Made by a program: the position numbers and the translations under genes | Part shown: positions 20,903 through 61,583 of the stretch, piece by piece | How the letters are laid out: every line of letters begins with the position of its first letter | Position numbering within the stretch: the first letter of the stretch is position 1 | The notes under the pieces: model-generated | The model's input: only the letters and a program-made list of their open reading frames with translations | The model's database searches: none | What the model was told of the DNA's origin: nothing | From: Convolutriloba macropyga | Taxonomy: Eukaryota | Reading direction: 5' to 3' | Assembly: GCF_964194025.1 (NCBI RefSeq) | Contig: NC_134475.1 | Location: 6,820,001 to 6,884,000, forward strand | Length of the DNA stretch: 64,000 bases

Positions 20903-21016
20903 CTGAGTAGAATTGAATGATTGGAAAAATGGAAAGATTTGGTGAGTATCCTAGGCGGACAACACATGATCTAATCTATCAACAGTGAAAAGTTACACAA
21001 CACTAAAATCATACCC

Positions 21017-21183: not shown

Positions 21184-21302
21184 TCATACCCCACCGATTC
21201 AACACTTTACTTTTTGTCAATCATCTAACAAGCTTCTCGCAAAATTTCTCATCACAAATTATCACATTGTCCATTGCATCATTACTCGCTCTGAACAATA
21301 AA

Positions 21303-21460
21303 AATCTTTTCCGTCTGTACCCCCCCGCCAGCGTTCCCCCAATTACAGAGAACGTGCCACTACATAGTAAAAAATATGTAAAAATACGACACGTGCATCT
21401 GGGGTGCAAATAATATTTACCCACTACGCTTGGGGGGGGGGGGTGCACAATCGGAAGATC
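21303..21460 (+). mobile_element. Degenerate GGATCT-MITE copy
   Basis: C-run, cacgtgcatctgggg, acgcttgggg G-run and gaagatc end in the family order. Confidence 0.6.
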
Positions 21461-21740
21461 TGAAAATTCTTAGAAGATCTCTCGCGATAAAAGTTCTGGA
21501 ATCATTGGGGTAGTAACTACATACACTCATAAATCTACTCTTGCAACTGTCGATGCTCAAAATTTTTCGCTGTCAAAAATTTCTTTTCTTAATCAATGCT
21601 CGCTGCAATGACTTGTTATTGGTAGAAGCTGCATTTTTTGCAACATGTTTTGATAGTTGGCTGGGTAAATAATATGGAAGTAAAACTAGCAGTGCAAACA
21701 TTAAGCATGCAGAAAATTATTGTTCACGCTAGCACACGTG

Positions 21741-21901
21741 TGATATATTCTCTCCCCCTCCACTCTCCGGTGTTTTCTACGCCCCATTTACAATTTATGT
21801 TTTGTTCTATAACACGTTACTATGTAAAATAGCACGCGCGCCTGTAGGAGGGCGAAAGATTTATATGCTCGCTAAGCTGGGGGGGGGGGCAGAATAGATC
21901 C
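21741..21901 (+). mobile_element. GGATCT-MITE with degraded TSD
   Basis: Family body and cagaatagatcc end; flanks cacacgtg / ctcacatg (6 of 8 match). Confidence 0.85.
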
Positions 21902-22268
21902 CTCACATGTTACAAAACTCAGAAACAATACGAAGGAATCATGAACAACGGACAGAATGATTTTGATCAAAGTTCCCGATCAACGTCCGATCCCAGTTCT
22001 AAAACTCTGTCCACAAAGAGTAAAAAACGTTTGGTCGAATATAATGGAACAGATATGTTAGTATTAGCAAACCACTTTTAGGCTTATTTTCTCCAAACAA
22101 GTTCGATCATGCGCACTTATGGAAAGTTCTTGGCAATTTTTCCTTCACAACTGGTAGCCTGTAAGTCTTTCAAATAGCCAGGGAACAGAACAATTCTGAG
22201 TCAAAGGGAGAATAATTATGTCAGTTTATTTAGTGTGGTGGTTTTTTGAGCTGTTAATGTTGACAAAC

Positions 22269-23106
22269 CTTCAGATGACTATGGACCGAGTTCTCCCTGG
22301 AGATAGCCGTACTTCCTGTGTTCATGCCAGAGTACTGTTGTTGATGTTGCCCAATTGCATTCTGATGCTGCAGATGATGATGCTGATGATGAGATGCGAA
22401 CTGTTTCCGGTCACTGACCTCTGCTGTTGACGTCATTTGGTTATTAAAGCTTGTTTCCTGATTAACTGGATGGGATGTTTGTTGCATCGAGCTTGGTCCT
22501 GTCGTTGCGTTTGGTCCCTGGTCCAAATTTTGCGACCGGGCAAGAGAACGGTGGCTTTGATGTCTGGACATTGATGATGCTCCGTCGTGGAATTCCCTGC
22601 CACGATGTGACACGCCTCGCTCCATTGTCGGGCCCAATGAATGCGAAATGCGATTGGACATGGAATTCAAAGCGGGCGATGCTGGAGTTGATACCGATTC
22701 GTTCATGTCCTTCACTCCATCTCTGGTTATCCTGTTCTCATCGACATTTGAGGGGGCCGAATTGATATCAATATTATTCTGACTTTGAAGAGTTTTCAGC
22801 TTCTCGTTGGCTTGGATGACGTTTTGGGCAAAAGATCGCAAAGTTGTCAAACTGGCCGCTTTTGATGAGTGCTCACTGGATTGATGTTCGTTTCCGCTGG
22901 AATTAGCAAATAAAGACACGTGACAGTTCCATCCAGTTTCGAGGCCCAGCTTCTCGGCAAATATCCGGGAGCGAAGTTCATTCTCGTGTGAGAAATGGAC
23001 AAATCGAATACAACGTGACTCAAAATCTTCAATGAGATCAAGTACATCGGGCATGGCTTTGTATTGCATCACAACCATCCCCAAGAAAATTTGACCAGAT
23101 TGAGCT
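22269..23106 (-). CDS. TMEM94: TMEM94 exon (AQSGQIFLGMVVMQY...GLETGWNCHVSL, then start of the low-complexity insert)
   Basis: ORF 22254..23084; acceptor actgtttcag, donor AAG|gtttgt; phase 2-0. Confidence 0.93.
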
Positions 23107-23353
23107 CTGAAACAGTAAAATTATTTATCTCCTTTACACAAAAAACGGCGCATTCAAATCTTTGATAATCGATTAGTTTCCAAAGCAACAAAAACAAAGT
23201 TCATGGCACAAGTTTAACGAGTTTCGTGAGCGCACTCAACCAAAAACAAGTTTGATTTTAAAAACAACAATCAATTTATGTTCAATACATCGTTCTACCA
23301 TTTGAACCGCTGATCAATTTCAAGTTTTTCGGTTAATTGATGGTACTATGAAC

Positions 23354-23694
23354 AGATCTTTTGAACAATTCCTCCCCTGCAAAAGGTGTGCTATTCCTGA
23401 ATAGAATTTAAGTGAGCGATTTATTAACTAATCAGAGACTACTATTAACTTTTCATGGATGCGCATGCATAGATAACGATACGCCATGCTATGTTGATTA
23501 GCCGATTTGGAATACAAAGCGAAAAACCTTTCCGACTGGTGGGTCAGTGAGCATACTTCGCGAGCGTCTCAATTGCACTTAAACTGATATTACGCTATCT
23601 AAACTGTCGACCAGGTAATATTGCGGTAAAGTATATCATAGAAGGGGCAATTCTCTGCTAGTTACACAAGGGGAGACAATTGTTGAAAAGATCC
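23354..23694. mobile_element. Second GGATCT-terminated TIR element (about 340 bp, different body) with 8-bp TSD
   Basis: agatcttttgaacaattcctcccct versus aggggagacaattgttgaaaagatcc; flanks ctatgaac / ctatgaaa (7 of 8 match). Confidence 0.8.
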
Positions 23695-25684
23695 CTATGA
23701 AATTTTAGCTAGTACATTATGTATAGTTTCTTTCTTATCACATGACATTTTTCCCAAGCAATTTCACTGGCTTAACACAAAGACGGTTACAAGCCCAAAA
23801 ACAAATTGGTTCTGGCTATTAGTAGAAAAAATGTAGCAGCTATGCTTTCAGAGAAGCAAACTTAAACAAAGGTTTTAGACTTCTAGCGCGCTGCAAACGG
23901 CATTTTTACAACTGCCAAGCTATCAGCATTTCAGTCACATGGAAAAATGTTTCAAACACGTTACGGGCGTGGAGATCTGAATAAAGAAAAAACCAGAAAA
24001 AGACGAAATAGATGACATCGAACACAATTTTAAAACAACACAACAACTTAAAAATCAAACTCAATGAAAATCAACCTTTTCACCGCTCAAAAAGTGCTTT
24101 TCGATCTGTGTTTTGCGATCTAGAATGAAGGCTCTCAATTTCTTTTCCATCCCACTAAAAGGGACGGTCAAACTGTAATAACTGTTTGTTTATTCACACA
24201 AATAAAGAAAACAAAAACACGTTCAAGAAACTCTTTCCAGCCTAAATAAAAAGAAAACGGTAAGGTTTACATTTCTCAACGCGATTCGAAAATTATTTTA
24301 ATCGGAAGTTTTAAACAGGGCCCTACAATTGTATCAAGCGATGTAGGGGCTTGGGAGGGAGACAGGGGTATTCAAATCTCCATGTGCAGGAGGGTGGACA
24401 AAGAGTGTTGGGAATAAGTTCAAGCTAAGAACAAAATTCTTTCAACTAATAAGATAGCCAGCAGAATACTAGAAACGACTCGAAGAGCAGTACAATCTCT
24501 AAAATTACTTCACCTTAAGATGAAAAAAACATGAAAAAAGAAAGAAACAATTTAAAAAATTAACTGCCTAATAAAACTTTTGAAAATGTTTTGAAAAACT
24601 GATAACTCAATTTTAAGTTCAGGGAGTTAGTGTCGGGCAGGAGGTATGTAGGTGGAGTGAAAGGCAGGTTTGGGGAGGGGTACTTAGGTGTGGGGATAGC
24701 TAATTGGTAACGGGATAGCTAGGTCGGTGGGAGAGGGAGGAGTGGCGGTGAGGGGAAGTGTCTGTAGTTTGGAAAGGGACCGAGACCGTTATGGTAAAAC
24801 TGCTTTAAAAAATTTTTCGACATGAAGTTTTACAATCAATTCCTAATTTCTATGTATCACTAAGTAAGCAACTAATACAGAAGTCAATGTTCAAAAACAA
24901 AAGTCGAAACTTCAAGTCATGAACAAATTTCCATAAGCTATAAAAATCTGTTTACCAATTCTCTTCTCCGAGTCATAAAAACCTGTCGAGTACCAATACT
25001 TCTTTTCAATTCGTAAAAAAGCCAGAAGCGCGCTCAGCTTACAGCTTCAAAGCTATTAAAAGGAAAGATGAATCTCATGCAAAATGGGACCTATATTGTA
25101 AGAGACTTTACCAGAGATTAATCAACAATATCAAGAATAATGGTTGTTGTGGAAATGTTCAAAATTTTGTTTGACTTTTTAAAGGTTGATTTCGTCTATT
25201 TATTCGAACTGTCCGTTAAAATTGTCAAAAAATTAAATGCAATTGGTCACACATAGACCAAAACGAGCTAATAATTTTCAAATATGATCGACGAACGTAA
25301 GCCCAATTGATCTGAAACGTATGGCGTGGGGCTAGCTTTGGTTCCATCTAGCTTAAGCCTAGGGAAGCTAGCTTCACTGATTGAGGGTAAGAAAAAATTA
25401 TGAGGGGTGGGCGGAAAATCTTGCAAAATTGTCATGAAATTACGACTACCGAGAAGTTTCAGTGGAAACATAAATAGTATTAACGCTGAACGACTACTAG
25501 AAAAAACTTAGCGCTTTCGGGCTTTAGCAGTTTATGTTGCTTCTCTCAAAGAAAAGTCAAATTAGTCAGAAGAAAAAGAAACAAGCGAAAAAATGCAGGA
25601 AAAAACAACAGTGCCCAAATACTTGCTACAAACTTTGCATTAATCTATAAATAGTTAATTGTTTAAAATTAATATAACACTAAC

Positions 25685-25750
25685 TTGGCCAGTCCCTTGG
25701 CGTCACTCACGAAGTCGGTCGAATGAACATTCTCCATATCTGCCAGAACA
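25685..25750 (-). CDS. TMEM94: TMEM94 66-nt exon (VLADMENVHSTDFVSDAKGLAK)
   Basis: Strong acceptor ttttctttttcag, donor AA|gttagt; phase 2-2, reads directly into AQSGQIFLGMV. Its coding frame is not in the ORF track. Confidence 0.78.
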
Positions 25751-26277
25751 CTGAAAAAGAAAACAACATCTGAATCAAGAAGACAAACAAAAACCAGCTG
25801 TTTACTCACATAATTCCTGAAAGTCCAAAAGGTTTCACATCATCTAAGTCAATTTGTTACAATTGTCAACGCTCAGAGCAAGTGAAAAATCTCGTGCGTC
25901 ATTGTGGTCATAATTCAGCCAGAAATATCCTTATAGATTTCACAGATACCTTTATACCTTATTTAAACAGCGCGATTGAAGTAGAAAGAATAAAACCACA
26001 GTTGAAATTCAGTCGAATGAAAAGCATCACAGTGAGAAATCAATTCCGACGCTTCATTGCGACGTTTAGAAACTTTTTTAACGCCAACAACAGATTTGGT
26101 AATTTCTTATCAAAAGAAATAGATACAGAGCCCAAAAACATGTAAGAAAAGCAATATTTAAAGAAAAAATAGCCAATCCCAAAACTAGAAAAGGTTGTTT
26201 GAGCCTAAACGTGTAATAAACGTGTAAAGAAATGAATAAAAGAGGCAAAGAAGAAGACGATAGAACAAACGACTGAC

Positions 26278-26298
26278 CTGGTAGGGTTAGGCTGAAAC
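26278..26298 (-). CDS. TMEM94: Candidate 21-nt TMEM94 microexon (K-FQPNPT-S)
   Basis: tctgtgcaattttacag|GTTTCAGCCTAACCCTACCAG|gtcagt; symmetric phase 2-2 and stop-free between the flanking exons. No homology support. Confidence 0.55.
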
Positions 26299-26599
26299 CT
26301 GTAAAATTGCACAGACATGACAAATATATTCACATTGCAAGAATACAAGCTAAAAACTGACGGCTGCGAACTGCAATAGTACTCTTTGACAAAGGTGAAC
26401 CCTCAATTTGCATTTTTACATAGCAAACTGTTTTTTAAGATTAAAATCAGTGCTCTCCGAATTCGTTCGATTTAAACTTTACGTGATTTGACTCAAAAAT
26501 GATAGAATTAATAAATTCCAAGAACATTTCAGCAGGCGATATAAGATTGTCACTTTTCAGATAGCAGAACTAGACTTCCATATGAGAGCCGTTCAATTT

Positions 26600-27800
26600 G
26601 ATCGTGGCTCCATTATTTCAAGTGAAACTTTCGCTTTGTGAATTCAAAGATTTATTATCCAGATGAAGAGATTTAACGTCCAACTCAATTTATTGGTGCT
26701 TACTCAAAACTGGCAAACTTCTACCAAAATTTTCTTCATCAGTACTTTTGACATTTTTCAGAACCGACATTACGTGGCAAAAGTCCACTTGTTCGAGTAA
26801 GTTTACTTGAGTTTGTCACTATTTAACACGACCATATAAGATCCCAACTCCTCGTAACAGTTGTCTACGCCGTTATAGTTGCCTGGGATTACTAGCCGCA
26901 ATCAGTGACAGCTTGTCATTTGGTCCGAAAGGGAAGAAAGCCTTATAGGTAAATAAATTCAAAGAAGTACCTCACAAAACTAATCGTGGATTAAAAAAAC
27001 AATTAGCCGTTGCAGCTACCAATAAATGGTGACTAATCAAGAAATGTCTTGTGTTCGAAATGTTTTGTAATTACCAATATCAATGCTTATAAAAATAATT
27101 AAGTCTCGGAATTGAGTCTCAAGCAATTAATAAAACTCTATCAAAAAACTTCTATCAAAGGCTAACCGAAAACTCAAAATCGTGATTATGGAATACAATT
27201 ATCCTTGAAGAGAGTGACAAAATCCTGTTTTTCCGCCACTCATGTCCAAGAACAACGCAATTATTTTTTCATTGTAAATAGCAACTTGGATTTTTGCCAC
27301 GTAATGGAGTGCTATTAAAATGCCATCAATTTTTCAGTTGAATAACATAAAAACTGAAACAATGGGAATTTAGAATGGTTATAAACTTACTCCTCAAAAA
27401 CATGCAGTTTTGTATTAAAAATCGCAATTTGAGCGTTAGCTAATTTATTAAAAAATATTCACAGAATTTGTATCTTTCTCAACATTTCTTTGTACGAAAA
27501 GAACAGGCAACACATTTCCAACCAAAACAAACATAATAATGATAATGTCTTTATTGTATCACTTCGGCATAGAAACAGGTTGCATGCTTAGTTTTAAAAA
27601 GCAGGAAACCATATTTGCAACAAAAAGTATTGTGGATAGTTTCAAATGAAAGCTGAAATATACAAAAAAAAATTGAACAATGTACAAATTGTTCTTAGTT
27701 TTTGATGCAGCTACATTAGAATAAATAAGTTAAATTTGCTAATAATGAGATGTTTTTGCCCTTCCGTGGCCAAAAGTCACAAAAATTTGTCACATATTCC
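26600..27800 (-). mobile_element. Possible highly decayed LINE reverse transcriptase remnant
   Basis: Minus-strand peptide DGILIALHYVAKIQVAIYNEKIIALFLDMS (about 27235-27327) resembles the RT A.FLD.S.AFD region; other motifs are barely recognisable and the boundaries are guesses. Confidence 0.3.
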
Positions 27801-29028
27801 AGTTTAATGTCCCTGTTATCCACAATGAAAAAACTACTCCTTCAGCGTGCAGCTATGATGTGACAGGAAAAGCATAAGTATGTCACTTGTATCGGTTGAG
27901 TAAAAAACCATTGTCCAGTATTTGGTGCATTCAGTTAGCCTAATGTATTATTGCACGAAGTTAGTTTGTAATTGATTGAGACCCAATTCAGAGGCTAAAT
28001 TGTTCTTATGAAAAGTGATATATGCAGTCGCAAAAAACTGCTAGTTGTCTTCTTAATCAACAACGAGTATTGGGATGGACATTTCTGTAGTTAATCATCA
28101 ATAAGGATATCTTTCATTTTGTTCTAATTGAGATGATGTTGTTAGCTATAGCGGTTATTATATGCTGTAACCATGGACATCAACGCTGGCTAAAACAGGC
28201 CAGGCCAGACAAATTACGCGGATAGTTTCAAACTAAGCAAACTAAATTCATTCACCATCTCAAATATCCAGATACGCGTGCAGTCCTAATCTTAAAACAT
28301 GGTCGTTAATAACATTGTATTTTCACGTATGCACCAGATATAGCAAAAAAATTACAAGAAGAGTAGGACACGAAACTTGTTATTCGTTTAACATTCATAA
28401 TTTCACATTAAATTACAGAAAAAGATCCCAGAAGGATATAAGAACTCTTATCCTCAGTTAAAGCGAAACGAATGAGAGCAAAAAGTTACTTTTTCAAATG
28501 CGATAATCGAGACGATCGGAAACCTTACAACAGAATTGACATAAAAACCAACGACAACGATTATCATAAATGTCGCCATGAAAGCAAATTTAGTTGTTTT
28601 CAGTTGTTCAATTGAAAAAATATAACTGGCAGATTGCCAGAAAATAACCGCAATCGTAGACCTGCATTCTCAAAAAGATGCTGAGATGATATATTTTGAT
28701 TCAGAATCTGTATAACTTTTTGCTGCTTCTATTAGCTGCTCTCAAATAGCCTTCAATTAGAATGACACACATTCACTTGACCTCATCTCTTTGAATTTAA
28801 GTGAAAAAAGTCTTTTTGAATTTCAAAGTGAGGAAGTCATTTTTAAGAGTGAGGTAAGCCAAGTGTGACCAAAAACTAAACCACGCGAATGTACAAAAAA
28901 TTGGTTCCACTAAGACTGCAAAATGACGTTGAAAATCACGTAATTCAGTTGAAATTTCATGAACGATTGAACAAAAAGCAGATTTGAAGTGGTCGTATGA
29001 TCGTAACAAAAATCTTGACGACGAAGTA

Positions 29029-29995
29029 AAAACATACCCGGCAAGTAAAAATATACGAAGTAAAAACATTGCCGGAAAATAGCCGCCGTTGATTCCAATA
29101 AGCATGATTGGGATTGAAATAACAGAAGATATTGAAAAAGAAAGATTTTTGTACAAAAATATTTTTTTAAGTCCGATTTATTTTGAAGGCGTTTCGTAGT
29201 TGAACATACTTCTGTTTTAGAGAGGGGCTACAGGGGCTACCATCAACAACAATAAGCATTAGAGATGGTAAATAAGACTTATAGGAACAACGTTCAAATA
29301 GCGGGCATCTAAAATTGGGCTTTATGGGTTTATCCCGTTTCTATTTCTGACATCCATTTTTGTACTAACTCTGTTCATTTTGAATTGCTTTGCTGAGCAA
29401 CTGATGTTCAAAATCACTTTTAGCAGAATGAAAGAAGAGAGAAACTAGCCTAGAGAAGTCAAAAAGATTTCACGCAAAATGTTGAAAAGGCGGCAAAATG
29501 AGTTAAAGCGAAACATTTTTTTATTCGACGAAGTAAAAAAACATAGCAGGACGAGTCCTGACGTACAATTCAAAGAATTTTCATTGACTAAACAGAAAAC
29601 TAGACCTAGAACGGACTATGAGTGGATTGGTTAAACCATTTAGAAAAAAATCCGATCCAAAAAAACGATAAAACAGTAAAAATCAAAGTCAAATTGCCGC
29701 ATGTGAACAAAAAACCACTAGCGAGAAAGCGAATTTTTGTTCAAACACCATTTTCTCACTCTACTTTAAATTTGGAGCGTAAAAAATTCACGCCGCAAAA
29801 CCACTCGCTTTTTCGCTCCACTTCCTGTTTCGACGTGACCAAAATCACTACTCCAATTTGACTTCAAAAATCATGAAAATGTGTGAACAGATCTTAAAAA
29901 AAAAAAGACAGCGCCCCAATACAATTCAAATTCTTTGAATTGTAAAAAATAGGAGCGCTATAATAGCCGGCTGAGAAGATGAGGGCGGCTATTAA
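29029..29995 (-). mobile_element. HINE-like family H1 copy
   Basis: Same termini and long shared body (gggcatctaaaattgggctttatgggtttatcccgtttc, gtcctgacgtacaattcaaag) as 11627-12536. Confidence 0.78.
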
Positions 29996-30250
29996 AAAAC
30001 AAAGAGAAGGTCAATAATAGCGCCAGCTATCGCTAAGCGGCTAATAAAAAATAATGTCACAGGACAATTTGACGTAGGGAACTCTACCCATAATAAGTTT
30101 GGATGGTTGGAACACTAAAAGTCTAACATTTTGAACAAAAAAAAGGTTAAAACAGCAAGAAGCGAATTTTTTAGCAGACCGATTGATAAGTGTTGGATCA
30201 AATGCCGCAGTCATTATGAAAAAAAACTTGCTTTGATCAATTTAACTAAC

Positions 30251-30691
30251 TTTTTGCCACCAGGTAGCTCCAAGTAGAAATTGTCGAGCACTTTTGAGAA
30301 GTCAGAGAAGACAGGTCGATATGCAAATGCAGTGCAGTAAGCCGAAAGCGAAGCTCTTGTGTAGAAATCGTGGATCTTTTTCCTCAATTCAGGACTCAGA
30401 GGGTGAATTCCCTTTCCGTCCCAAAAATCAGGACAAACGTCACATAGCATGTCAGCTGTTCCCTGTGTGAACAACTGTTGCAGCCCAGTTGAGGTATCGT
30501 GAACAACCACAGAACATAAAAAGGGGAATGGAGTCTTCTTCCTCAGAATCGCTTTGATTCTCCTCATTTTAAACGTGTCACTCGGATCAAATGGTTGAGA
30601 CTCGCGGAAAGATTGGATGTAGTTTTTCACTTCGTAACTTTCGGTGGCGTTTTTGGCAAACCCTATTGCCTCGGACAACTCGCAAGCGCAT
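30251..30691 (-). CDS. TMEM94: TMEM94 exon (CACELSEAIGF...DFWDG...AYCTAFAYRP...LELPGGK)
   Basis: ORF 30214..30699; acceptor atgtttag, donor AA|gttagt; phase 2-2. Confidence 0.93.
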
Positions 30692-31220
30692 CTAAACATA
30701 TTTCCATTTAAGGAACTTTTCTTTCATAATCAATATATATCGTAGATGCACAGGCTAAAACAATTTTTCACTATAAAACCTGTAGAATCTTTCCAACATC
30801 ACTTCAGCATTTGCTAACTGGAATTGTAAATAAAAAGTTTTTGAGAAATTGATTAAAATCGGATCTTTTTCGTTATCAAATGGCAATAAACAGAAGAGGT
30901 TCGCTTAGATTAAAAATTCCAATTACATGCGGAATCATGAAACAAGGTGAATCGTTGTTTGCTGTGCGAATCATAGTAAATGTTCCAACCCAGACTTTTG
31001 CTTCAATAACGGAGGAACAAGAGCCAAACAGAGGCAGGGGAAGAACTCAGAAATTTAGCCGGTAGATCGCCACAAAAACAGCTGCGGTTGCTAGACATGT
31101 AGGCCCAAAATACCAAAAAAACTACTGATACGAGGAAAAACCTTTAAAAAATGTCAATTTTTTTGATTAAAATCAATAGTTTCTGAAAATTTCCCTCAAA
31201 AAGCTTCAATTATTCAGAAA

Positions 31221-31310
31221 CACCGCACCACACCACACCAGACCTACCTCACCATACCACACCAGACCACACCACACCACACCACAGAAGACCACGCCAC
31301 ACCACATACA
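31221..31310. repeat. Degenerate (CACCA)n simple repeat
   Basis: caccacaccacaccagacc... read directly. Confidence 0.9.
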
Positions 31311-31357
31311 CACGCATAATTAACTTGTTGTTAAATAAATTTTCTGCGGGAAAAATC

Positions 31358-31610
31358 AAAACATAGCCGGCAGATTGCTGGAAAATAGCCACCGTTGACC
31401 CGCTTGACGCACATTGGGATTGAAACAGAAAAATAAAAAAAATAAGAAAGAGAAGCTGACAGAATTTTTTTAATTGTCAAAGTGTCAAAGTTATGCATAT
31501 TCGGTTAGATTCTAAAAGTAAACTTAATTCAGCTTCTAAACTGAAGTCTATTAAGAATAGTAATAATGCTAGCTAGCAATCACTTTAATGAACTCTGATA
31601 ACCTAATTGT
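31358..31610 (-). mobile_element. HINE-like family H1, 3' portion (a matching other end may be at about 32761-32799)
   Basis: aaacatagccggcagattgctggaaaatagccaccgttgac..., similar to the 13742 copy. Confidence 0.6.
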
Positions 31611-33206
31611 CAGTCAAATAAAAAAAACGGCATTTCAAGCAAACTCTCAGTGCTGCACTATGTCAAATGAAATCAATTGCGAACAAAATGAATATCGAAG
31701 GAAAAGACTAAAATAATTATTTTTAACAACTGATAAAAACAGAGCTATTTAGAATTATAATTCTCACTAAAAGGAAAGACTGATACATGTTAGAATGCGG
31801 AGAATAAGGACAGAAACAAAAACACATCGAAAAACAAACAGACTAAAACTTTAAGACTAAAGACTTTCGAAAGTTTAAAATCAAATTTAAAAAAATTCCT
31901 TATTTAGCATAAAAGTACATAACTATCCTCCTGTATAAATTAGAATGTAACATGAAAACAAGTGAAACATGGTTCACAGATTGGAAACAATAAAAAAATT
32001 TTGAATAAATTTGTCCAAAAGATTTTCAAAATTGCACTCACGAAAAATTTTAGCCACAACATTTTCAATTATCCGTAAAAAAAGTTAGTATCACTGACAG
32101 AAAAAAAGAACTTCTCTGTTAGCATATCAAAAAAAAACAAAAAACCAGTAAAACTCGACAAAGAAATGCCAAAATCGGGCATTCATGTGAACAATTCTAT
32201 AAAATAAAACAAAAACACCTCACGTTATAAAAAGGCACTCAAATCACGAAATATCAAAGGTAAATTGCCATGTGCACTGAGCTGATTCTTGAAAGAACAT
32301 CCTCTTTAAGATCCAAAAAAAAGCAAATTAAATGAAAAAGCCAAAAATGAATTTGAAAATTGGAAATTTGGAAATGAATTTGAATTCATTTGAAAATGAA
32401 TTGAAAAACCCTGTGATATCAATTTGAGAGGTTCACATATCAAAACAGCTTCTATTAAAAATTATTTCCTAAAAAATTAAAATATAGGCGAAAAAGCTGG
32501 GCCAATGGGACGGAAGAACGGCTAAAAATGGTTATCTATATAAAGCATTCTCTCAAAAAACACCTTTCAAATCCGAAAATTCATCAATGATCGAAGCGCA
32601 TGATCGAATACACTTCTCTCGCTCATACAAAATAAGTCCACACGTCAATTTTACCCTTTCGCTTCTTGGTCAAAACGCCGTCTGAACGAATAGTACTTCC
32701 GCTAAAAAAACTTAAGAAAACAAATACTCATCTTCGAGTCGCAAAAAAGGAGAGCACCCAAATAATAGCCCTTGAGAGGCTGGCGGCGGCCATTAAAAAG
32801 AATAATAGACCTAGTTTTCTTTTACATCACCCGATCTACTCGGTTCTATGAGCTTTCGAAAGATACCACTTTCAATTCTCTACTCAAAAGATAAAAATGG
32901 ACCGTAGGCGCCTTTTCAAAAAAGTTCCCCGGCACAAAGTTCCACCCCAAGGCTTTCGGGTCTTATAATTTCAAATGATAAAGCGCACGACTCAAACGGT
33001 TGCCGCATATTTGCCTAAAAATTTTGATAAAACGCTAGTTTCATTTCGCTGTCAAATTTAGACTACATTTGTCTTCCGCTGACGTGGCATGATGGCGTTG
33101 TACTAATTTTGGGCTTTAGAATCGGTTGGAAAGATGCGACAGTTGAAAAGTTAACTTGACACATTTAAGAGAACAGAAAATGATATCAAATTCCAACTGG
33201 TTGCTG

Positions 33207-35220
33207 CAATTATATGAGTTCATTGTCGCTTGAAGCATCTGTCAAAACAATCTGTCTATTGGACAAAAATAAAAATAACTTTAGATCTGTTTCCTTTTTC
33301 TTTATCAACAAAGTTTTCATTAGGCTACGTGAACAAACTGATGCGTTCTTTTTCATTAGCCTTGAGAAATCCCCATAACAATAATATTAACGGTTACAAG
33401 GTTGAAAATTACTAATTACGGGTGGTCGTTAATTTATCAGTGAGATGATGGAGGGTCGAGACGTTGGGGGTGGGGTTGGAAACAGTTCCAAAACATTGAA
33501 AGCGATGACAACGTTAAGTTTATTTTCCACATCATCGATATTGTCTTCACTTCTTTAGGCGTGCAGAACAACATATTAACAAGGAGGCCACTATATATTG
33601 ATTGTAATTGAAATCTATATATCCAATATTTAACACATCATATTAAGGTCTTAATTGTTTCGTCCATGAAATTTATTGAGAAGAAATTAAAGAGGTTGAT
33701 AGGCGTATGTTCCAAATTTCCATTCTGTGTATTGCTTCATGTTGCCAGATTCCATAACGCATATGAACAGAACCAGCAAATTGCCAGAAAACAGCCGCAA
33801 GAGGCCCACTTGAAATATCTTAAATTTTTCCAAAAAGTGGAGGAAAACCAGAAAATAACTATTTTGATGGCGGTGGTTGGCGTTGGTGTCAGAAAAATAC
33901 GTAATGAGAAAAAATACCCAAAAATATACCCAATAATTTATCCTAATGTTGATACTACCAGAACGACTATTTAGCATAATATTATCTAAATGAGATAACT
34001 TAGAATGCAATCAAGTATATTTATCAAGTCTTAAATGTGAGACTAGTACATTTCTCCATGTCTCAGTGGCCCATGGAACTTGACATATTTTGTTACATTT
34101 TGTTGATACATTTTGTTCTAAAAACTTGATACATTTTGTTCTAAAAAAGCACACATGGACTGCAAAAAGGGACAACAAAGATTGTAAAGACAATGAGTCA
34201 CGGTCAAAATTGACGATCAATTATATGAGTTCATTGTCGCTTGAAGCATCTGTCAAAACAATCTGTCTATTGGACAAAAATAAAAATAACTTTAGATCTG
34301 TTTCCTTTATCTTTAAGTTTTCATTAGGCTACGTGAACAAACTGATGCGTTCTTTTTCATTAGCCTTGAGAATTTCCCATAACAATAATATTAACGGATA
34401 CAAGGTTGAAAATTACTAATTACGGGTGGTCGTTAATTTATCAGTGAGATGATGGAGGGTCGAGACGTGGGGGGTGGGGTTGGAAACAGTTCCAAAACAT
34501 TGAAAGCGATGACAACGTTAAGTCTATTTTCCACATCATCGATATTGTCTTCACTTCTTTAGGCGTGCAGAACAACAAATTAACAAGGAGGCCACTATAT
34601 ATTAATTGTAATTGAAACCTATATATCCAATATTTAACACATCATATTAAGGTCTTAATTGTTTCGCCCATGAAATTTATTGAGAAATTAAAGAGGTCGA
34701 TAAGCGTATGTTCCAAATTTCCATTCTGTGTATTGCTTCATGTTGTCAGATTCCATAACGCATATGAACAAAACCAGCAAATTGCCAGAAAACAGCCGCA
34801 ACAGGCCCACTTGAAATATCTTTAATTGTTCCAAAAAGTGGAGGAAAACCAGAAAATAACTATTTTGATGGCGGTGGTTGGCGGCGGTGTCAGAAAAAAT
34901 AAGTAATGAGAAAAAATACCCAAAATATACCCAATATTTTATCCTAATGTTGATACTACCAGAACGACTATTTAGCATAATATTATCTAAATGAGATAAC
35001 TTAGAATGCAATCAAGTATATTTATCAAGTCTTAAATGTGAGACTAGTACATTTCTCCATGTCTCAGTGGCCCATGGAACTTGATATATTTTGTTACATT
35101 TTGTTGATACATTTTGTTCTAAAAACTTGATACATTTTGTTCTAAAAAAGCACACATGGACTGCAAAAAGGGACAACAAAGATTGTAAAGACAATGAGTC
35201 AAGGTCACAATTGACAATCA
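33207..35220. repeat. Direct tandem duplication of about 1.0 kb (33207-34217 and 34218-35220)
   Basis: Both units start caattatatgagttcattgtcgcttgaagc and are near-identical, with scattered substitutions and small indels; duplicated ORFs appear in the track. Confidence 0.95.
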
Positions 35221-38041
35221 AAATTGAAGATCATTTTAAGAGAAAAAAGTGAGAGAGAGAGAGAGATCTTGTTATAGAGCATTGCTAAATAAAACACTGA
35301 TCCAGGTACGACATGATTCATTTTAAAATTAACGTTGATGATAAACAGCTCCTGATAAATACTCGAAGAAAACTTCTATGCACTAAGCTTTGAACATATA
35401 AAAACAAACCAATGGTAAAAAGCAATTGCACATAAGGTTTGTATATCGATTCAACCTGAACTCATCGAGTAAAACATGAAGTCACAGGACGCATACTAAT
35501 AGTTTACAATTTAATGGTTCATTATCTTACCTGATAACGAATAACAAATGAAACACGAATAGCAAAAACCGCAAAAAAATATCACGTAAACAAAAATCAC
35601 GTTAACAAATGTACCCGTCATATTACCGAAAAATAGTCGCCATACATTCACATAACCACGATTGGGATTGAAAGAACAGAAAAAAATCATTTTTTCACAA
35701 AAGATTTTTAAAGTACGTTCTATTTTGATTGGGTAATGTAGTTAGATATACTCCTGTTTCTTCATGAGAAGATACAGGGACTAGTATCCATATAAATAAA
35801 AATGAGACCTGTTATCTCAGCCTGATTACAACAGAGCTTAAATACCGGGCATCTAAAACTGGGCTTCATCCCGTTTGTATTTTCCTCTGTCATTTTTGTT
35901 CGCTTTGCCGAATACCTGTTCCTTAAAATCACTTTGAGAAAACACGAGAGCAGTACAACTAGCCTAGAGAAGTTAAAAGCCATTTCATGCAAAATCTTGA
36001 ACAAGCTATGGCCTAAGATAAAGCAATAAAATTTTTCTTTTGTTCGACTAAGTTAAAAACAAAGCAGATCAAATCCTGAATTACAATCCAAAGAATTGGA
36101 AAATTTAATAAACTGACAATCAAAATTTTTACAGAAAAGAAACTAGAACAATCAACACAGCCCGTGACACAATAGACATAGGCAAAAACCAAAAAATCTA
36201 AAACAATGCCACACTAAATAGGGGCGATAACAACCGTTATTTTTGAGACTAAGCGATAAGACCGCCAGAAAAACAACAAAAACATGCGAGACTAACTTTC
36301 ATTTTTCGAAAAGAGCGTGTCAAAATCATATAACGGAGTGCAAAGGCAGAAACGAGTATTTGATCCTATTAAATTTCAAAAAAACCAATGACACTAGTTA
36401 TTATTGAGACTAATTCCTAAAACAAAAATACATCCAATTTTCGAAGAACTCAATAAATCGCAAATACTTTCTGAAAACACATAGAAAAGTCAAAGAAGAC
36501 AATAACTACGGACAAAAAACAAGTATTGCAAGCAACTTAACGCTCAATATCAACCGATGAGACCTGTCAACAACGAGACTGAAATATAAGATAGCAATAA
36601 GTAAAAGATATGCAGGCAAAACTAAAAACCTCACTAATTTTTATTTTGAAAAACAAGCCGCGTATTAGTCAGGGAAAGCGATAACTCTGAATTGAAAACG
36701 AAATGAACAGCAAAAACTTGCAAAACTCAAAAATTCGATATTATTTCCTGAAGACAATGTGTCAAATGAGAATTGACAAAAGCAAACTATTCTCAAAAGC
36801 AAACTATGAGAAATGTCCATAATGATATTTATTGATAAGACAACAGCAAGTAAAACAAATACTCGCAAAGCCCAACAGACGATACTCACAAAACTCAAAA
36901 ACATTTTCTTAAAACATGTATTTTATTGTAATATCTGTATTGTATATAAAGCAAACGTTATGAACTGAAAGACATCAGGAATGTCAATTGTCCTTTCCCT
37001 AACTATAATGCCGAACTGACTTGTCTTTAATGATAGTTAAAGATAAGACAACAAATACGACAACAGATAGGGGCAAAACTCAAAAACAAAGTGAAATTTC
37101 AGGCAACCAAATAGAGTTAAAGTCATCGAAATTATACGCTGCCCATTGCAAATGGTAACAATTGCATATATTAAACATTATTTGAACAAATATATAAACA
37201 TTTGTACCATTCGAGGATAAATATTATTGAAAACATAAGTGAAATTGCCGCACGTGAAAAGAGAATATTTGTTCAAACATCAACTTCTCATTCCACTTTT
37301 AAAGCAGTTTGGCCCTTGAACTTTACGCCCTTGAACTACTCACCTTTTAACTACACTTTAAAATCAAGTGTGATTAAAATCACTACTCGAAAGGTGACTT
37401 CTCATTGGCAACAAAAAGTAACAGACTTTCGAAAAATACCGGACCAATAAAATCGAAACAATTTGGTTAGTTAAAAATAGCAGCACAATTCCTGGGAAAC
37501 AATCAGAAGGGTTGAATGAAAAACGTAAAAATCCTTGACTCGACCAACAGTCCAATTGAATATTACGGCCCAAGCAGGCAGAAGAAGAGTCACCATAACT
37601 CAGAAAATCAAAAAAATAGCATTTAAATTGGCATTAAGAGAACATCTACCTCAAAAACCAACATAAAAATATTGCTCGCACGAGACCTTTCTGAACGCTG
37701 ACATATGTCAATTTAGATGAAACTAGCATTAAAAACACTGCTGCGCACTTTTGTCCTTGAGACCAAAACAAATATATTCAGTTCATTACATGAAAAAATA
37801 TTTTGCAGCAATCGCTTACAATCGATAAGAAGTTGGGTTAAAATTCTCAAAAAGATAGCTGGTCTACTTTTGTTGTTACTGTCATTACTATAAACAACTT
37901 GGGACCAAAGAAACGAATACGTACTAAGATATTAACAGGAAATCAAAAATTAAAAAAAGTTAGAATCCGAAATGTTTTTTTTTTAATTTGTGAACATTCA
38001 CACTTATTTGTCTGAAATTACAACTAATCGTAATGAAGCAG

Positions 38042-38259
38042 AAACATAAACCAACCAACGTCGGACAAAATAGCTCTAGAACGACAGGCGGGGCGATTTA
38101 ATCAGGGGCTCCAACCTGAACAATTTTTTTATGGGTGCAAAAAATTCTGGGACGAAGAGTCAAAACAAACAAAAAAGTGAGAGGAAATTGGTCCAAAAAA
38201 TGACACTTTGAAAAAGACTATCAGAATAATTACTACAAACTTTGTTTAAGGGGCAATGA
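38042..38259 (-). mobile_element. HINE-like family H2, short deleted copy
   Basis: aaacataaaccaaccaacgtcggacaaaatagctctagaacgacagg ... taattactacaaactttgtttaaggggcaat. Confidence 0.6.
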
Positions 38260-38872
38260 AAAACCAAGACAAGCGCAGTAACTGTCGCTACTAGATTATG
38301 CGGCTGTTGAAAGAAGTAAACTGAATTATTACTCTTAACAGATTCATGGTGTATACAAACCTGCTTTGAAGAGCACGCGTCCAGCTATACAAAGTGACAA
38401 ATATGAACATGATAATTTCAATTACTTGTACCTGATATAAATCCTAATTCTGCTTTATCTAACAAGCTCAGTTACTCTTTCTTCAGTTACCACAATAATT
38501 TTCAAGAAAACTTTGAACTTTTGGAAATTGCAGCGCGTTTCGGACAAAACACAATTTTTCTAACTTATTGTGTGTTGTGTCACATATACACCCAGATTGA
38601 AGTAGCTGGGCATATGCCTCATGTTTAGTACCAGAAGCCAAGGAATCGGTATTGTAATATTGAAGGAAAATATGGCGTTAATTCACGAACCAAGTTAAAA
38701 ATTTTTGGAATTAGCATTAAATGTCCCCTTTTTGATCATTTGCTGTAAAAAATCCCTCTTTATCTTGGGTCATTTTTTGCATCATTGATTCCCGTTGAGG
38801 TTTTAGTCAGCTTTTATTGCTACTTTTGATATGCTTTTACAGAAACCCTTTTTTGTAGCTAAGATCACGTAC

Positions 38873-39255
38873 CTTCTATTGACGACCGCAATCGAGTGGT
38901 TCTCAAGAGAGCTCACACAGAGCAAGTGATCTGCAAACTTGGTGTAAGAATCCTCAACATATTCATTGCATGTATTCAGGAGTATGTTGAGTCCCAGAGG
39001 CTTCAAAGATGGCAGATGCTGTTGCCATCTCTCGTCATCGAAGTGGACAAAAAAGCTCTCGTTATGATCGCACGAGAGATCCATCACTTCTGGAACGTAG
39101 ACAGCGTTCATGCTTCCAGTGTCCGAGTCGTTGCCTCCATCTCCACCCCCACCTCCCCGGTCGTCCGAGTTCGGAGGTCTTCCCGAGGTCGACTCGGCAG
39201 GGGACACAGTGTCGTCCGGTTGTTCCACTGGTCGGATAAAAAAGACGCGTTCGAC
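38873..39255 (-). CDS. TMEM94: TMEM94 exon (VERVFF...HLPSLKPLGLNILL...AVVNR)
   Basis: ORF 38803..39279; acceptor gttttccag, donor AG|gtacgt; phase 0-2. Confidence 0.93.
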
Positions 39256-39497
39256 CTGGAAAACAGATTTTTTTTCCATGTTTTAGCTCTTCCTATTAAG
39301 TGACAGGGAAGATTAAGGGGTTTCTGGGCGCTGATCGGAATGTAGTAGGCTGGCGGAGAAGTTTTTTCTCATTATAGCCCATTTCAACCACTTCCGTTAG
39401 GTGAAGGGGTTGAAGTCAATAATCTATAATCTATATACACGAAGTCAATAATCTATTCATATTCGACCACACCCTCAAACAAAATATACGAATTCTT

Positions 39498-39657
39498 GGA
39501 TCTATTCTGTCCCCCCCCAAGTGTTTTTTATGACCCCCCGTTACAAATTATATGATGTTATATAGCACATTACTATGTAAGAAAATAGCACGTGCGTCTG
39601 GGGGTCATAAAAAATTTATGCTTACTAAGCTGGGGGGGGGGGGGGGGGAATAGATCC
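39498..39657 (+). mobile_element. GGATCT-MITE with perfect 8-bp TSD gaattctt
   Basis: ggatctattc...gaatagatcc flanked by gaattctt on both sides. Confidence 0.93.
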
Positions 39658-39964
39658 GAATTCTTGCTAGGGCGTGTAAACCTTGCTAGGGCACTTGAGA
39701 AAACATTTCATCTATTTCGCATCTATTCTGCTTCAATAACTCCCCGGTTTAGTGGGCATACAACTTATACGCTCCTCAGTCGCAAGTGCTGTTTTTTAAA
39801 TAGTAACATGCTGTATGGCAACACAACACATAATGCGTAAGTGGACAGAAAAAGCAAAAGGCAAAAGGAGGAGGGGGGGGGGGCGAAACCGTTTAGATTC
39901 GATTTTTCGAATGATCACGTTCGAAATTCTTAAAATAGATTGTGAGAGCTCTGAAATAAAATAG

Positions 39965-40138
39965 GGATCTACTCTGTTTTGCCCCCCTCCCCTCCCCCGT
40001 GTTTTTTACGCCCCAGTTGCAAATTATATGTTGCTATATAACACGTTACTATGTAAAAAAAATAGCACGTGCGCCTGGGGGGGGGGCTAAAAGATATAAG
40101 CCAACTAAGCCACTGGGGAGCCAAAACAGAATAGATCC
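39965..40138 (+). mobile_element. GGATCT-MITE
   Basis: TIRs ggatctactctgtttt / aaaacagaatagatcc; flanks taaaatag / ggaaatag. Confidence 0.9.
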
Positions 40139-40181
40139 GGAAATAGTTTGTATGAGAGAATGATCATTTTGGGTGACTGAC

Positions 40182-40376
40182 CTTTGGGTTGGGCCAGGAG
40201 AGGACTCCCCTCTTGTCTACTACACTGAATATTGTGGTGGATCCCAGTCCATAGAGTAGGTTGGATGTCCTTGAGAGACTGGGGGACATTCCACTGATGA
40301 TAGAGATGAAGTGTCGCCAGGAGAACTTGAAGTGGTACCAACTACCGGACACTGCTTCTCCACGCGACACAGAACC
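40182..40376 (-). CDS. TMEM94: TMEM94 exon with the DKRGVLS motif (position of the P-type ATPase DKTGTLT phosphorylation motif)
   Basis: ORF 40164..40370 frame; acceptor ttccctatag, donor AAG|gtcagt; 195 nt, phase 0-0. Confidence 0.92.
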
Positions 40377-40457
40377 CTATAGGGAACAACAATGCAACCC
40401 ATTACGTCAACTCAACACAACCACTAAAATTGATCTACAAAAGTGATTTAAAATGTA

Positions 40458-44368: not shown

Positions 44369-44470
44369 CTGTTGTTGGCAAGAGGCCAGAAGTGATGCAG
44401 TAGTGAGGCCAGTCCACATTAGCCAGAGGACGGGAAAGAGGAGAGGAACCAGAGGTATCAAAATGTAGAT
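44369..44470 (-). CDS. TMEM94: TMEM94 exon (IYILIPLVPLLFPVLWLMWTGLTTASLLASCQQQ), transmembrane segment
   Basis: Inside ORF 44282..44515; acceptor tgtttgcag, donor CAG|gttagt; PLLFPVLW motif. Confidence 0.92.
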
Positions 44471-61224: not shown

Positions 61225-61311
61225 CTGTAAGAGGCAATACATTTCGAGGGCTGAGCCCACGTGTGGGCCCATTAGTATAAAGAGTAAGCCTCTAGCGAAG
61301 AAAGAGGTGAG
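61225..61311 (-). CDS. TMEM94: TMEM94 exon variant A (87 nt, phase 0-0): LTSFFARGLLFILMGPHVGSALEMYCLLQ
   Basis: Acceptor tcctctattttcag, donor CAG|gtaaga. Joins in frame to IYILIPLVPLLFP and matches the TMEM94 segment just before PILPLLFP. Not in the ORF track. Confidence 0.87.
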
Positions 61312-61370
61312 CTGAAAATAGAGGACAAAAGGTGAACAACGGCGGTGTCAAGGTCACAAGTGTCACTGAC

Positions 61371-61457
61371 CTGATGTAGCAAGTACATCTCTATTTGGTG
61401 TCCGACGTAGTGTCCCAACTTTATGAAGAGGACGCCGTTGATAAACAGACCGGTCAG
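61371..61457 (-). CDS. TMEM94: TMEM94 exon variant B (87 nt, phase 0-0): LTGLFINGVLFIKLGHYVGHQIEMYLLHQ
   Basis: Acceptor tgtgctttttag, donor CAG|gtcagt, open frame of 29 codons, paralogous to exon 61225-61311. Not in the ORF track. Confidence 0.85.
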
Positions 61458-61498
61458 CTAAAAAGCACAGTCACAACAAAACCAATACGCTTTTGCTT

Positions 61499-61583
61499 CC
61501 TCCTCCCTCCCTCCCTCCCTCCCTCCCTCCCTCCCTCCCTCCCTCCCTCCCTCCCTCCCCCCTCCCCCCCCCGCTCCCCTCCC
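61499..61583 (-). repeat. (GGGA)n tract on the transcribed strand, just upstream of the exon B acceptor
   Basis: Plus strand (ccct)n run followed by further C-runs. Confidence 0.95.

What the first reader, a model, noticed from the sequence alone, without database searches (positions are those of the whole stretch)
61225..61457. Hidden tandem-duplicated exon pair: probable mutually exclusive switch in a TMEM94 membrane segment
Seen: two 87-nt, phase 0-0, stop-free exons, each with canonical AG/GT signals, encoding ungapped paralogous peptides LTGLFINGVLFIKLGHYVGHQIEMYLLHQ (B) and LTSFFARGLLFILMGPHVGSALEMYCLLQ (A), sharing LT..F..G.LFI..G..VG...EMY.L.Q. They are separated by only 59 nt, whereas every other intron in this model is about 400 nt or longer. 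Neither appears in the ORF track. Established: equal length, paralogy and a very short donor-to-branch-point distance are the classic signature of mutually exclusive exons. Inference: both copies keep an open frame and splice sites despite about 50% amino-acid divergence, implying selection on both. The exon covers the end of a transmembrane helix and the loop leading into PLVPLLFP, which I infer corresponds to the M4 ion-binding helix of P-type ATPases. B has three His residues and A has one His plus a Cys, so the isoforms could differ in ion, pH or redox behaviour. I am not aware of such a pair in TMEM94, but could not search.
Basis: partly seen in the sequence, partly recalled or inferred. 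Interest (0 to 1): 0.82.

Follow-up and report, generated by a model that had tools for sequence, protein, structure and literature searches.

The report
Mutually exclusive exon pair in TMEM94
A small exon of an invertebrate TMEM94/ERMA membrane-protein gene has been duplicated in tandem, and RNA from a close relative shows each transcript using one copy or the other, giving two versions of the segment beside the protein's disputed magnesium-binding site.

Summary
On the minus strand, exons B (61457-61371) and A (61311-61225) are each 87 nt and phase 0-0, with AG/GT signals. They lie 59 nt apart and encode paralogous 29-aa peptides (15/29 identical; in-window tblastn E 2.4e-6; no third copy). 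The gene is a TMEM94/ERMA homologue (E 1.8e-28 to human TMEM94 structures).

RNA contigs from four runs of a relative about 95% identical show upstream exon-A-downstream exon and upstream exon-B-downstream exon at similar depth. There is no B-A junction and no intron coverage.

The corresponding exon is a single 87-nt exon in a nemertean, a crinoid and an octopus, so the duplication is lineage-specific. It is also old: synonymous sites between A and B are saturated. The known differences between the two species are almost all synonymous, so both copies appear to be under purifying selection.

The exon encodes the end of TM3, the luminal loop and the start of TM4a. It ends five residues before the PxxP unwinding, which is the proposed Mg2+ site in human ERMA.

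The 59-nt spacer makes steric exclusion the likely mechanism, but this is inferred. Functional differences between the isoforms are untested. This is a new member of a known kind.

The parts
61371..61457 (-). Exon B, 87 nt, phase 0-0. Encodes LTGLFINGVLFIKLGHYVGHQIEMYLLHQ. It keeps the family-typical N7 and G19-H20.
   Evidence: RNA contigs in 4 runs cover 61371-61458, flanked by the upstream exon and the 44470 exon.
61312..61370 (-). 59-nt GT-AG spacer intron between B and A. The last ~21 nt are a pyrimidine tract. Candidate branch-point adenosines lie 17, 23 and 38 nt from the B donor.
   Evidence: and direct reading. RNA depth is zero and no B-to-A joint is seen.
61225..61311 (-). Exon A, 87 nt, phase 0-0. 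Encodes LTSFFARGLLFILMGPHVGSALEMYCLLQ.
   Evidence: RNA contigs in 4 runs cover 61225/61231-61312, flanked by the same upstream exon and the 44470 exon.
44369..44470 (-). Shared downstream exon, 102 nt. Encodes IYILIPLVPLLFPVLWLMWTGLTTASLLASCQQQ, which is TM4 with the PxxP unwinding motif.
   Evidence: tblastn with TMEM94 orthologues. The loose ends of both RNA contigs read ATCTACATTTTGATTCCTCTGGTTCCC.
4363..40388 (-). Remaining TMEM94/ERMA coding blocks: about 40388-40185 (contains VDKRGVLS), 39282-38821, 30693-30250, 23114-22257, 20950-20201, 9555-8026, 7632-7507, 6770-6495, 5854-5570, and 4926-4363 with the stop codon.
   Evidence: tblastn with ten orthologues. Matches to PDB human TMEM94 at E 1.8e-28 and 7e-19.
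61502..61583 (-). G-rich (GAGG/GGGA)n tract of about 82 nt in the pre-mRNA, 45 nt upstream of the exon B acceptor. It may be a splicing regulatory element; this is inference only.

Best explanation
A conserved 87-nt, phase 0-0 exon of a TMEM94/ERMA gene was duplicated in tandem in this animal's lineage. The two copies, B then A, are spliced in a mutually exclusive way: each mRNA joins the upstream exon to either B or A, and then to the TM4 exon 17 kb downstream. This gives two protein isoforms that differ only in 29 residues. Those residues form the luminal half of TM3, the TM3-TM4 luminal loop and the first turns of TM4a, and they end five residues before the PxxP unwinding of TM4.

Exclusivity is most likely enforced sterically. 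The intron between B and A is only 59 nt, so the B donor sits 17-38 nt from any plausible branch point of the A acceptor. That is too close for both to be occupied by spliceosomal complexes. NMD cannot enforce the choice, because double inclusion or double skipping would stay in frame.

Shown: the anatomy, the paralogy, the gene's identity, expression of both single-exon forms in a close relative, and a single-copy state in three other phyla. Inferred: the same splicing occurs in the window's own species, the mechanism is steric, and the isoforms differ in function.
For: Anatomy and paralogy:
- A and B find each other at E 2.4e-6 in the window, with no third copy.

RNA evidence:
- In runs X23-X26, 138-nt contigs carry [upstream exon ...ATGAAAGTTGTACCCATTGCTGT(G)]-A-[ATCTACATTTTGATTCCTCTGGTTCCC].
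- Other 138-nt contigs carry the same flanks around B.
- Depths are 5.3/18/9.2/12.6 for A and 8.5/20.4/15.1/12.3 for B.
- There is no joint between 61371 and 61311, and depth is zero in the spacer and introns.
- The B contigs run unbroken 27 nt into the downstream exon, and the A contigs run unbroken 24 nt into the upstream exon. A B-to-A junction of any abundance would have split these de Bruijn paths. This last point is my inference from k=31 graph logic.

Selection:
- Third codon positions match in only 9 of 29 codons, and pS is 0.79 (saturated) against pN 0.36.
- Between the two species, the four located changes in A are all synonymous: L10, L13, and TTA to CTG at L28.
- In B, one change is synonymous (V18) and one is conservative (Y17F).
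- In the downstream exon, 2 of 2 changes are synonymous (and direct reading).

Gene identity:
- Matches to human TMEM94 structures.
- Orthologues are named transmembrane protein 94 by their sources.

Position in the protein:
- Both isoform peptides align without gaps to human TMEM94.
- Human TM4 unwinds at 334-PILP-337 (PMC13322241), described as the PILPLL motif in PMC12134183.

Ancestral state:
- The same 29-codon exon is single-copy in Tubulanus (L001 3637-3723), Antedon (L003 6276-6362) and Octopus (L004 22976-23062).

Steric criterion:
- A donor-to-branch-point distance under 50 nt is the criterion for steric interference used in PMC5740500.
Against: - The RNA comes from a different organism label (about 95% identical in exons), not from the genome in the window.
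- Only assembled contigs were available. They drop rare variants, so a low level of B+A inclusion or double skipping cannot be excluded.
- The tissue and stage of the four samples are unknown. The A:B depth ratio varies only from about 0.6 to 1.0, so no switch-like regulation was seen.
- The minimum spliceable intron length in this organism is unknown. Some invertebrates splice introns of 50-60 nt, so the steric argument rests on vertebrate and fly rules.
- In one run (X23) a contig joins the end of exon A to an unidentified sequence, which is unexplained.
Confidence: 0.85

Rival explanations
1. The pair is still spliced mutually exclusively, but the choice is enforced by something other than steric hindrance. 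Candidates are trans-acting repressors or activators (for example proteins binding the (GGGA)n tract upstream of B) or competing RNA structures.
For: An 82-nt G-rich tract lies 45 nt upstream of the B acceptor. An 8-nt complement (CAACGGCG in exon B, CGCCGTTG in the spacer) pairs in the minimum-free-energy fold. Many mutually exclusive clusters have no simple mechanistic explanation (PMC5740500).
Against: The fold of the region is no more stable than shuffled sequence (z -0.95, 18 of 100 shuffles fold at least as well). There are no selector or docking-like repeats. The 59-nt spacer alone already meets the steric criterion. All four splice sites are U2-type GT-AG, so U2/U12 incompatibility is excluded.
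Confidence: 0.2
2. The two RNA forms in the relative do not come from alternative splicing of one gene. They come from two alleles or two paralogous gene copies, each carrying one of the exons.
For: De Bruijn contigs merge identical flanks, so a bubble alone cannot separate isoforms from paralogues. No genome of organism G was examined.
Against: In the window's genome both exons sit 59 nt apart inside one gene, each with intact splice sites. DNA runs of that species hold the arrangement at word share 1.00. The window contains a single set of TMEM94 blocks. A and B are only 54% identical in DNA, far beyond allelic divergence.
Confidence: 0.04
3. One copy is a decaying duplicate or a poison or noise exon without function, and only the other copy makes working protein.
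For: Neither copy keeps the family-conserved R10 or W21. A also lacks the conserved N7 and H20. Function was not tested.
Against: Both are expressed at similar depth in four samples. Both remain open with intact splice sites even though synonymous sites between them are saturated. The located changes between species are 4 of 4 synonymous in A and 1 synonymous plus Y-to-F in B. Each aligns without gaps to human TMEM94, and A scores slightly better (25.2 against 19.4 bits).
Confidence: 0.06

Closest known systems
Mutually exclusive exon pairs made by tandem exon duplication and enforced by donor/branch-point proximity (alpha-tropomyosin exons 2/3 is the textbook case, cited from memory; 57 human clusters meet the under-50-nt criterion in PMC5740500)
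   Same: Adjacent homologous exons of identical length and phase, with canonical splice sites. Each is joined singly to common flanking exons. The intervening intron is too short to place a branch point 50 nt or more from the upstream donor.
   Different: The host gene (TMEM94/ERMA) has no reported mutually exclusive cluster (0 papers). Both exons are multiples of 3 nt, so there is no NMD backstop. The steric mechanism is inferred here, not tested.
Mutually exclusive exons encoding alternative transmembrane segments of ion channels, e.g. CaV1.2 exons 8/8a encoding IS6 (PMC3060452)
   Same: The alternative exon swaps a membrane-embedded segment next to the permeation or ion-binding region while leaving the rest of the protein unchanged.
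   Different: The protein has a P-type-ATPase-like fold rather than being a channel. Tissue specificity and functional consequences are unknown. Regulation by PTB-like factors was not examined.
Human/mouse TMEM94 (ERMA), cryo-EM structures 9jjk, 9yyd, 9ywq
   Same: Homologous along the gene (E 1.8e-28 and 7e-19). TM4 has a PxxP unwinding motif (PLVP here, PILP in human). The alternative exon aligns without gaps to human residues about 300-328.
   Different: About 40-50% identity in conserved blocks. There are long Q/N/S/H-rich coding inserts. The TM3-TM4a exon is duplicated here, whereas three invertebrate orthologues examined have one copy. Vertebrate exon structure was not examined.

Membership tests
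Mutually exclusive exon cluster (criteria of Pillmann 2011 / Hatje 2017, PMC5740500) | Neighbouring exons of the same or similar length in the same reading frame, without in-frame stops | tested here: met
   Both are 87 nt, phase 0-0 and open, lying 59 nt apart.
Mutually exclusive exon cluster (criteria of Pillmann 2011 / Hatje 2017, PMC5740500) | Sequence homology between the exons | tested here: met
   15 of 29 residues identical without gaps. In-window tblastn E 2.4e-6 against a next best hit of 0.3.
Mutually exclusive exon cluster (criteria of Pillmann 2011 / Hatje 2017, PMC5740500) | Canonical splice sites on each exon | tested here: met
   B: tttttAG|...|GTcagt. A: attttcAG|...|GTaaga.
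Mutually exclusive exon cluster (criteria of Pillmann 2011 / Hatje 2017, PMC5740500) | Transcripts join each exon singly to the same upstream and downstream exons | tested here: met
   Up-A-down and up-B-down contigs in 4 of 4 RNA runs of a relative about 95% identical. Not tested in the window's own species.
Mutually exclusive exon cluster (criteria of Pillmann 2011 / Hatje 2017, PMC5740500) | No or rare transcripts containing both exons | tested here: met
   No joint from 61371 to 61311, and unbroken contig paths across B-to-down and up-to-A. Contigs cannot exclude rare forms.
Steric-hindrance type of mutually exclusive splicing | Distance from the upstream exon's donor to the downstream exon's branch point under about 50 nt | tested here: inconclusive
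   The whole intron is 59 nt. Candidate branch-point adenosines lie at +17, +23 and +38 (read). The branch point was not mapped and the size limit for this organism is unknown.
TMEM94 / ERMA family | Significant sequence homology to TMEM94 across cytosolic and C-terminal membrane domains | tested here: met
   PDB human TMEM94 at E 1.8e-28 and 7e-19. 369 homologues were found. The bilaterian animal representatives among the 20 looked up are mostly named transmembrane protein 94 by their sources. Ten colinear tblastn blocks.
TMEM94 / ERMA family | TM4 broken by a PxxP(LL) motif | tested here: met
   IPLVPLLFP at 44455-44429 aligns with human PILPLLFP (PMC12134183, PMC13322241).
TMEM94 / ERMA family | Conserved aspartate in a DK(T)G-like motif after TM4 (human D417/D427 in the two papers) | tested here: inconclusive
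   VDKRGVLS is encoded in the block 40367-40185. I did not align it residue by residue to the human aspartate.
TMEM94 / ERMA family | Mg2+ transport or ATPase activity | not testable with these tools
   The function is disputed even for the human protein (PMC12134183 against PMC13322241).

The most novel reading that the evidence does not exclude
The two isoforms are functionally distinct forms of TMEM94/ERMA. Swapping the luminal end of TM3, the luminal loop and TM4a changes substrate affinity, luminal gating, or pH/metal sensing at the exit of the proposed ion site. B carries three His residues, including H28 seven residues before the PxxP unwinding. A carries Leu there plus a Cys. The pair would then be a natural two-state experiment bearing on whether TMEM94 is a Mg2+ pump at all.
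Probability: 0.15. Interest if true: 0.75.

Novelty: new member of a known kind. Interest (0 to 1): 0.5.

Why it matters
TMEM94/ERMA is a human disease gene (a neurodevelopmental and cardiac syndrome). Its function is actively disputed: one group describes it as an ER Mg2+ P-type ATPase with an ion bound at the unwound TM4, and another finds no Mg2+ binding and no ATPase activity.

Here evolution has kept two alternative versions of exactly the TM3-loop-TM4a segment that leads into that site. They have persisted long enough for synonymous sites to saturate, and both are expressed. This marks the segment as functionally tunable. It also offers two natural sequence variants in an otherwise identical protein, which can be compared in transport, binding or structural assays.

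For splicing biology, it is a clean and compact example of an in-frame mutually exclusive pair with a 59-nt spacer outside the usual model organisms. It shows that such 'hidden' exons can be missed by ORF-based annotation.

Tried and rejected
- **Upstream exon.** I looked for it in 61800-64000 and found only repeats. Its last 24 nt are known only from the RNA contigs.
- **Runs search.** The first sequencing-run search included the (CCCT)n tract and mostly returned unrelated runs. The second search, on the exon pair only, found the useful RNA runs.
- **Protein fragments from relatives.** A 71-aa up+B+down query in the search for homologous proteins found nothing.
- **Contig look-up.** The look-up of encoding contigs failed for Tubulanus isoform X2 and worked with the longest isoform.
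- **Annotated isoforms.** Tubulanus, Octopus, Antedon, Diadema, Branchiostoma and Homalodisca were checked. The motif scan found the TM3-TM4 region only in Tubulanus, Octopus, Antedon and Homalodisca, and there all isoforms are identical.
- **Weak Tubulanus hit.** A tblastn hit upstream at L001 3108 is 8 residues directly after a stop codon and was rejected as chance.
- **Placing the organism.** MAFFT timed out. A query-anchored FastTree put the window protein on a weakly supported branch with long-branch nematodes and non-bilaterians. I draw no taxonomic conclusion.
- **Pfam.** Scans on single exons gave nothing useful.
- **RNA structure.** The fold of the pair region is not more stable than shuffles. 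Inverted repeats are unremarkable.
- **U12-type splice sites.** Rejected by reading the donors.
- **NMD as enforcer.** Rejected because 87 is a multiple of 3.

Full report
**1. Observation**

Read on the minus strand, the window shows the following layout:
- tttttAG | exon B (61457-61371) | GTcagt
- a spacer of 59 nt in total, ending in ...attttcAG
- exon A (61311-61225) | GTaaga

B translates to LTGLFINGVLFIKLGHYVGHQIEMYLLHQ. A translates to LTSFFARGLLFILMGPHVGSALEMYCLLQ. Both are 29 codons, open, and phase 0-0.

The peptides share 15 of 29 residues without a gap. Against all six frames of the 64-kb window, each finds the other at E 2.4e-6. The next best hit is E 0.3, and there is no third copy.

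The next coding exon on this strand starts at 44470, after ttgcAG. It encodes IYILIPLVPLLFPVLWLMWTGLTTASLLASCQQQ and ends at 44369 before GTtagt.

The upstream exon is not in the window.

**2. The gene**

Several lines identify the gene as a TMEM94/ERMA homologue:
- The exon at 30693-30250 matches human TMEM94 cryo-EM chains at E 1.8e-28.
- The last exon matches the same chains at 7e-19.
- An exhaustive HMMER search found 369 homologues.
- I looked up 20 representatives. The bilaterian animal ones (nemertean, amphioxus, octopus, sea urchins, crinoid, insects) are mostly named 'transmembrane protein 94' by their sources. Other homologues come from nematodes, a sponge, a glomeromycete fungus and a unicellular holozoan.
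- tblastn with ten orthologues gives ten colinear coding blocks from 44470 down to the stop codon at 4363.

The part of the gene encoding roughly the first 280 residues lies beyond the window's 3' end. No close relative of this protein (above about 50% identity) is in the protein libraries. A quick tree did not place it reliably, so I make no claim about the organism.

**3. RNA evidence**

Four runs labelled RNA, of a different organism code (G), hold words of the exon pair. Laid on 60300-62700, every run gives two separate contigs.

- The first covers 61225 (or 61231) to 61312.
- The second covers 61371 to 61458.
- Both carry the same loose end on the upstream side. In transcript sense it reads ...ATGAAAGTTGTACCCATTGCTGT(G), which encodes MKVVPIAV in frame.
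- Both carry the same loose end on the downstream side, ATCTACATTTTGATTCCTCTGGTTCCC. This is the start of the 44470 exon with two synonymous differences.

Depth is zero in the 59-nt spacer and in the flanking introns. No joint links 61371 to 61311. Depths are similar: A 5.3/18/9.2/12.6 and B 8.5/20.4/15.1/12.3.

The spliced junction to an exon 17 kb away shows that this is processed RNA.

The 138-nt length is what a k=31 graph bubble gives for two paths that share flanks. The B path continues unbroken 27 nt into the downstream exon, and the A path starts unbroken 24 nt inside the upstream exon. A B-to-A junction of appreciable abundance would have broken both paths. That last point is my inference, and contigs can still hide rare forms.

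**4. Age and selection**

A and B are 54% identical in DNA. Third codon positions agree in only 9 of 29 codons. The proportion of synonymous differences is 0.79 (saturated), against 0.36 for non-synonymous. The duplication is therefore old, yet both copies kept frame, splice sites and a shared motif (LT..F..G.LFI..G..VG...EMY.L.Q).

The differences between the window and organism G that I could locate are these:
- In A: L10 CTC to CTA, L13 CTA to CTC, and L28 TTA to CTG. All are synonymous.
- In B: V18 GTC to GTG (synonymous) and Y17F.
- In the downstream exon: ATA to ATT and CCT to CCC, both synonymous.

These come and direct reading of the loose ends. One or two further differences per exon lie near the ends of the aligned pieces and were not listed. 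The pattern fits purifying selection on both copies.

**5. Ancestral state**

I fetched the genomic loci of three orthologues. The same segment is a single 29-codon exon with the same boundaries in each:
- Tubulanus: MLMFFVNMMRYFFLKDNVGHWAEMAFVLQ (L001 3637-3723)
- Antedon: VISLFTNIGRYFVLTEDVGDWPDMVLVLP (L003 6276-6362)
- Octopus: FGVLIANVFRYIYIKGFMGHWTEMFLVLP (L004 22976-23062)

None has a second copy in the locus. None has an annotated isoform that differs in this region. The exon is therefore ancient, and the duplication is specific to the lineage of the window's organism and organism G.

Compared with 35 orthologous segments, B keeps the conserved N7 and G19-H20. A has R7 and S20 but keeps L28. 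Both lack the usual R10 and W21. Against human TMEM94, A scores slightly higher than B (25.2 against 19.4 bits). Neither copy looks like a decayed version.

**6. Position in the protein**

Both isoform peptides align without gaps to human TMEM94. This places the alternative exon at about human residues 300-328.

In the human structures, TM4 is broken by 334-PILP-337 (PMC13322241), described as the PILPLL motif in PMC12134183. One group models a Mg2+ ion at this unwinding. The other finds a lipid beside it and disputes Mg2+ transport.

By the P-type-ATPase topology described in those papers, the exon encodes three elements:
- the luminal half of TM3 (residues 1-12)
- the luminal TM3-TM4 loop (about residues 13-22; KLGHYVGHQI in B, LMGPHVGSAL in A)
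- the first turns of TM4a (EMYLLHQ in B, EMYCLLQ in A)

It ends five residues before the first proline of PLVP.

**7. Mechanism**

- All four splice sites are U2-type GT-AG, so spliceosome incompatibility is out.
- 87 is a multiple of 3, so neither double inclusion nor double skipping would shift the frame. NMD cannot enforce the choice.
- The local fold is no more stable than shuffled sequence (z -0.95), and there are no selector-like repeats.
- The spacer is 59 nt, and its last ~21 nt are a pyrimidine tract. Plausible branch adenosines (tgtgAc, cttgAc, gttcAc) lie 17, 23 and 38 nt from the B donor. This is under the 50-nt limit used as the criterion for steric interference (PMC5740500).

I therefore favour steric exclusion, at about 65% among the possible mechanisms. 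The caveat is that the size limit in this organism is unknown. The other gaps between coding blocks in this gene are about 390 nt or more.

An 82-nt G-rich tract 45 nt upstream of the B acceptor could modulate which exon is chosen. That is speculation.

**8. Comparison and novelty**

The structure is a textbook mutually exclusive pair born from tandem exon duplication. It meets all the sequence criteria used for such clusters. It also meets the transcript criteria, although only in a sister species.

What is new is the host gene and the position. No paper in the searched library combines TMEM94 with 'mutually exclusive'. The papers that combine TMEM94 with alternative splicing do not, by title and abstract, concern this region; I did not read them. 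I rate it a new member of a known kind.

Interest is moderate. The finding is solid, and it points at a segment next to the contested ion site of a disease-linked protein. However, the functional difference between isoforms is untested, and the organism is not a model.

**9. Loose end**

In run X23 only, a 568-nt contig starts with the last 30 nt of exon A and continues into a sequence that is absent from the window and unlike the intron. In that run the A contig stops exactly at the exon end, as expected for a real branch in the graph. It may be a junction to an exon outside the window, or a chimera.

Noticed in passing
window 61224-61254 (run X23): One RNA contig (568 nt, depth 4.7) joins the 3' end of exon A to GCATGCCTCGATTGCACTGTTCGCTGGTGT... 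instead of the 44470 exon. This sequence is not in the window within 6 edits and is not the downstream intron. It may be a junction to an exon outside the window (a back-splice or alternative exon) or an assembly chimera.
   Followed up: partly
window 61502-61583: A (CCTC)n microsatellite of about 20 copies. It is read as a G-rich (GAGG/GGGA)n tract in the TMEM94 pre-mRNA, 45 nt upstream of the exon B acceptor. A C12 run at 61720-61731 (transcript sense) could pair with it. It might influence exon B use.
   Followed up: partly
window 23120-22257, 20950-20201, 9555-7735 (minus strand): Very long open exons rich in Q, N, S, H and P (288, 250 and 607 codons) sit between the conserved TMEM94 blocks. 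Only their edges align to orthologues, so this TMEM94 carries large low-complexity inserts in its cytosolic domains.
   Followed up: partly
window 62270-62520, 63790-64000, 39970-40160, 40470-40700, 21100-21470: Repeated copies, in both orientations, of a short element with a poly-G/poly-C run next to the conserved text ...GTTACAA(G/A)TTA(T/C)ATGTTGTTATATAG(T/C)ACGTTACTA.... It looks like a dispersed SINE-like repeat in the introns.
   Followed up: no
window 33440-35230: Two near-identical tandem copies of about 1 kb within an intron. The stop-free stretches 35011-34691 and 34010-33690, and 34641-34444 and 33637-33440, are almost the same. This is a segmental tandem repeat of unknown nature.
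   Followed up: no
window 61413-61406 and 61345-61338 (minus strand; exon B and spacer): An exact 8-nt complement, CAACGGCG in exon B and CGCCGTTG in the 59-nt spacer, pairs in the minimum-free-energy fold. The fold as a whole is not more stable than shuffled sequence (z -0.95).
   Followed up: partly
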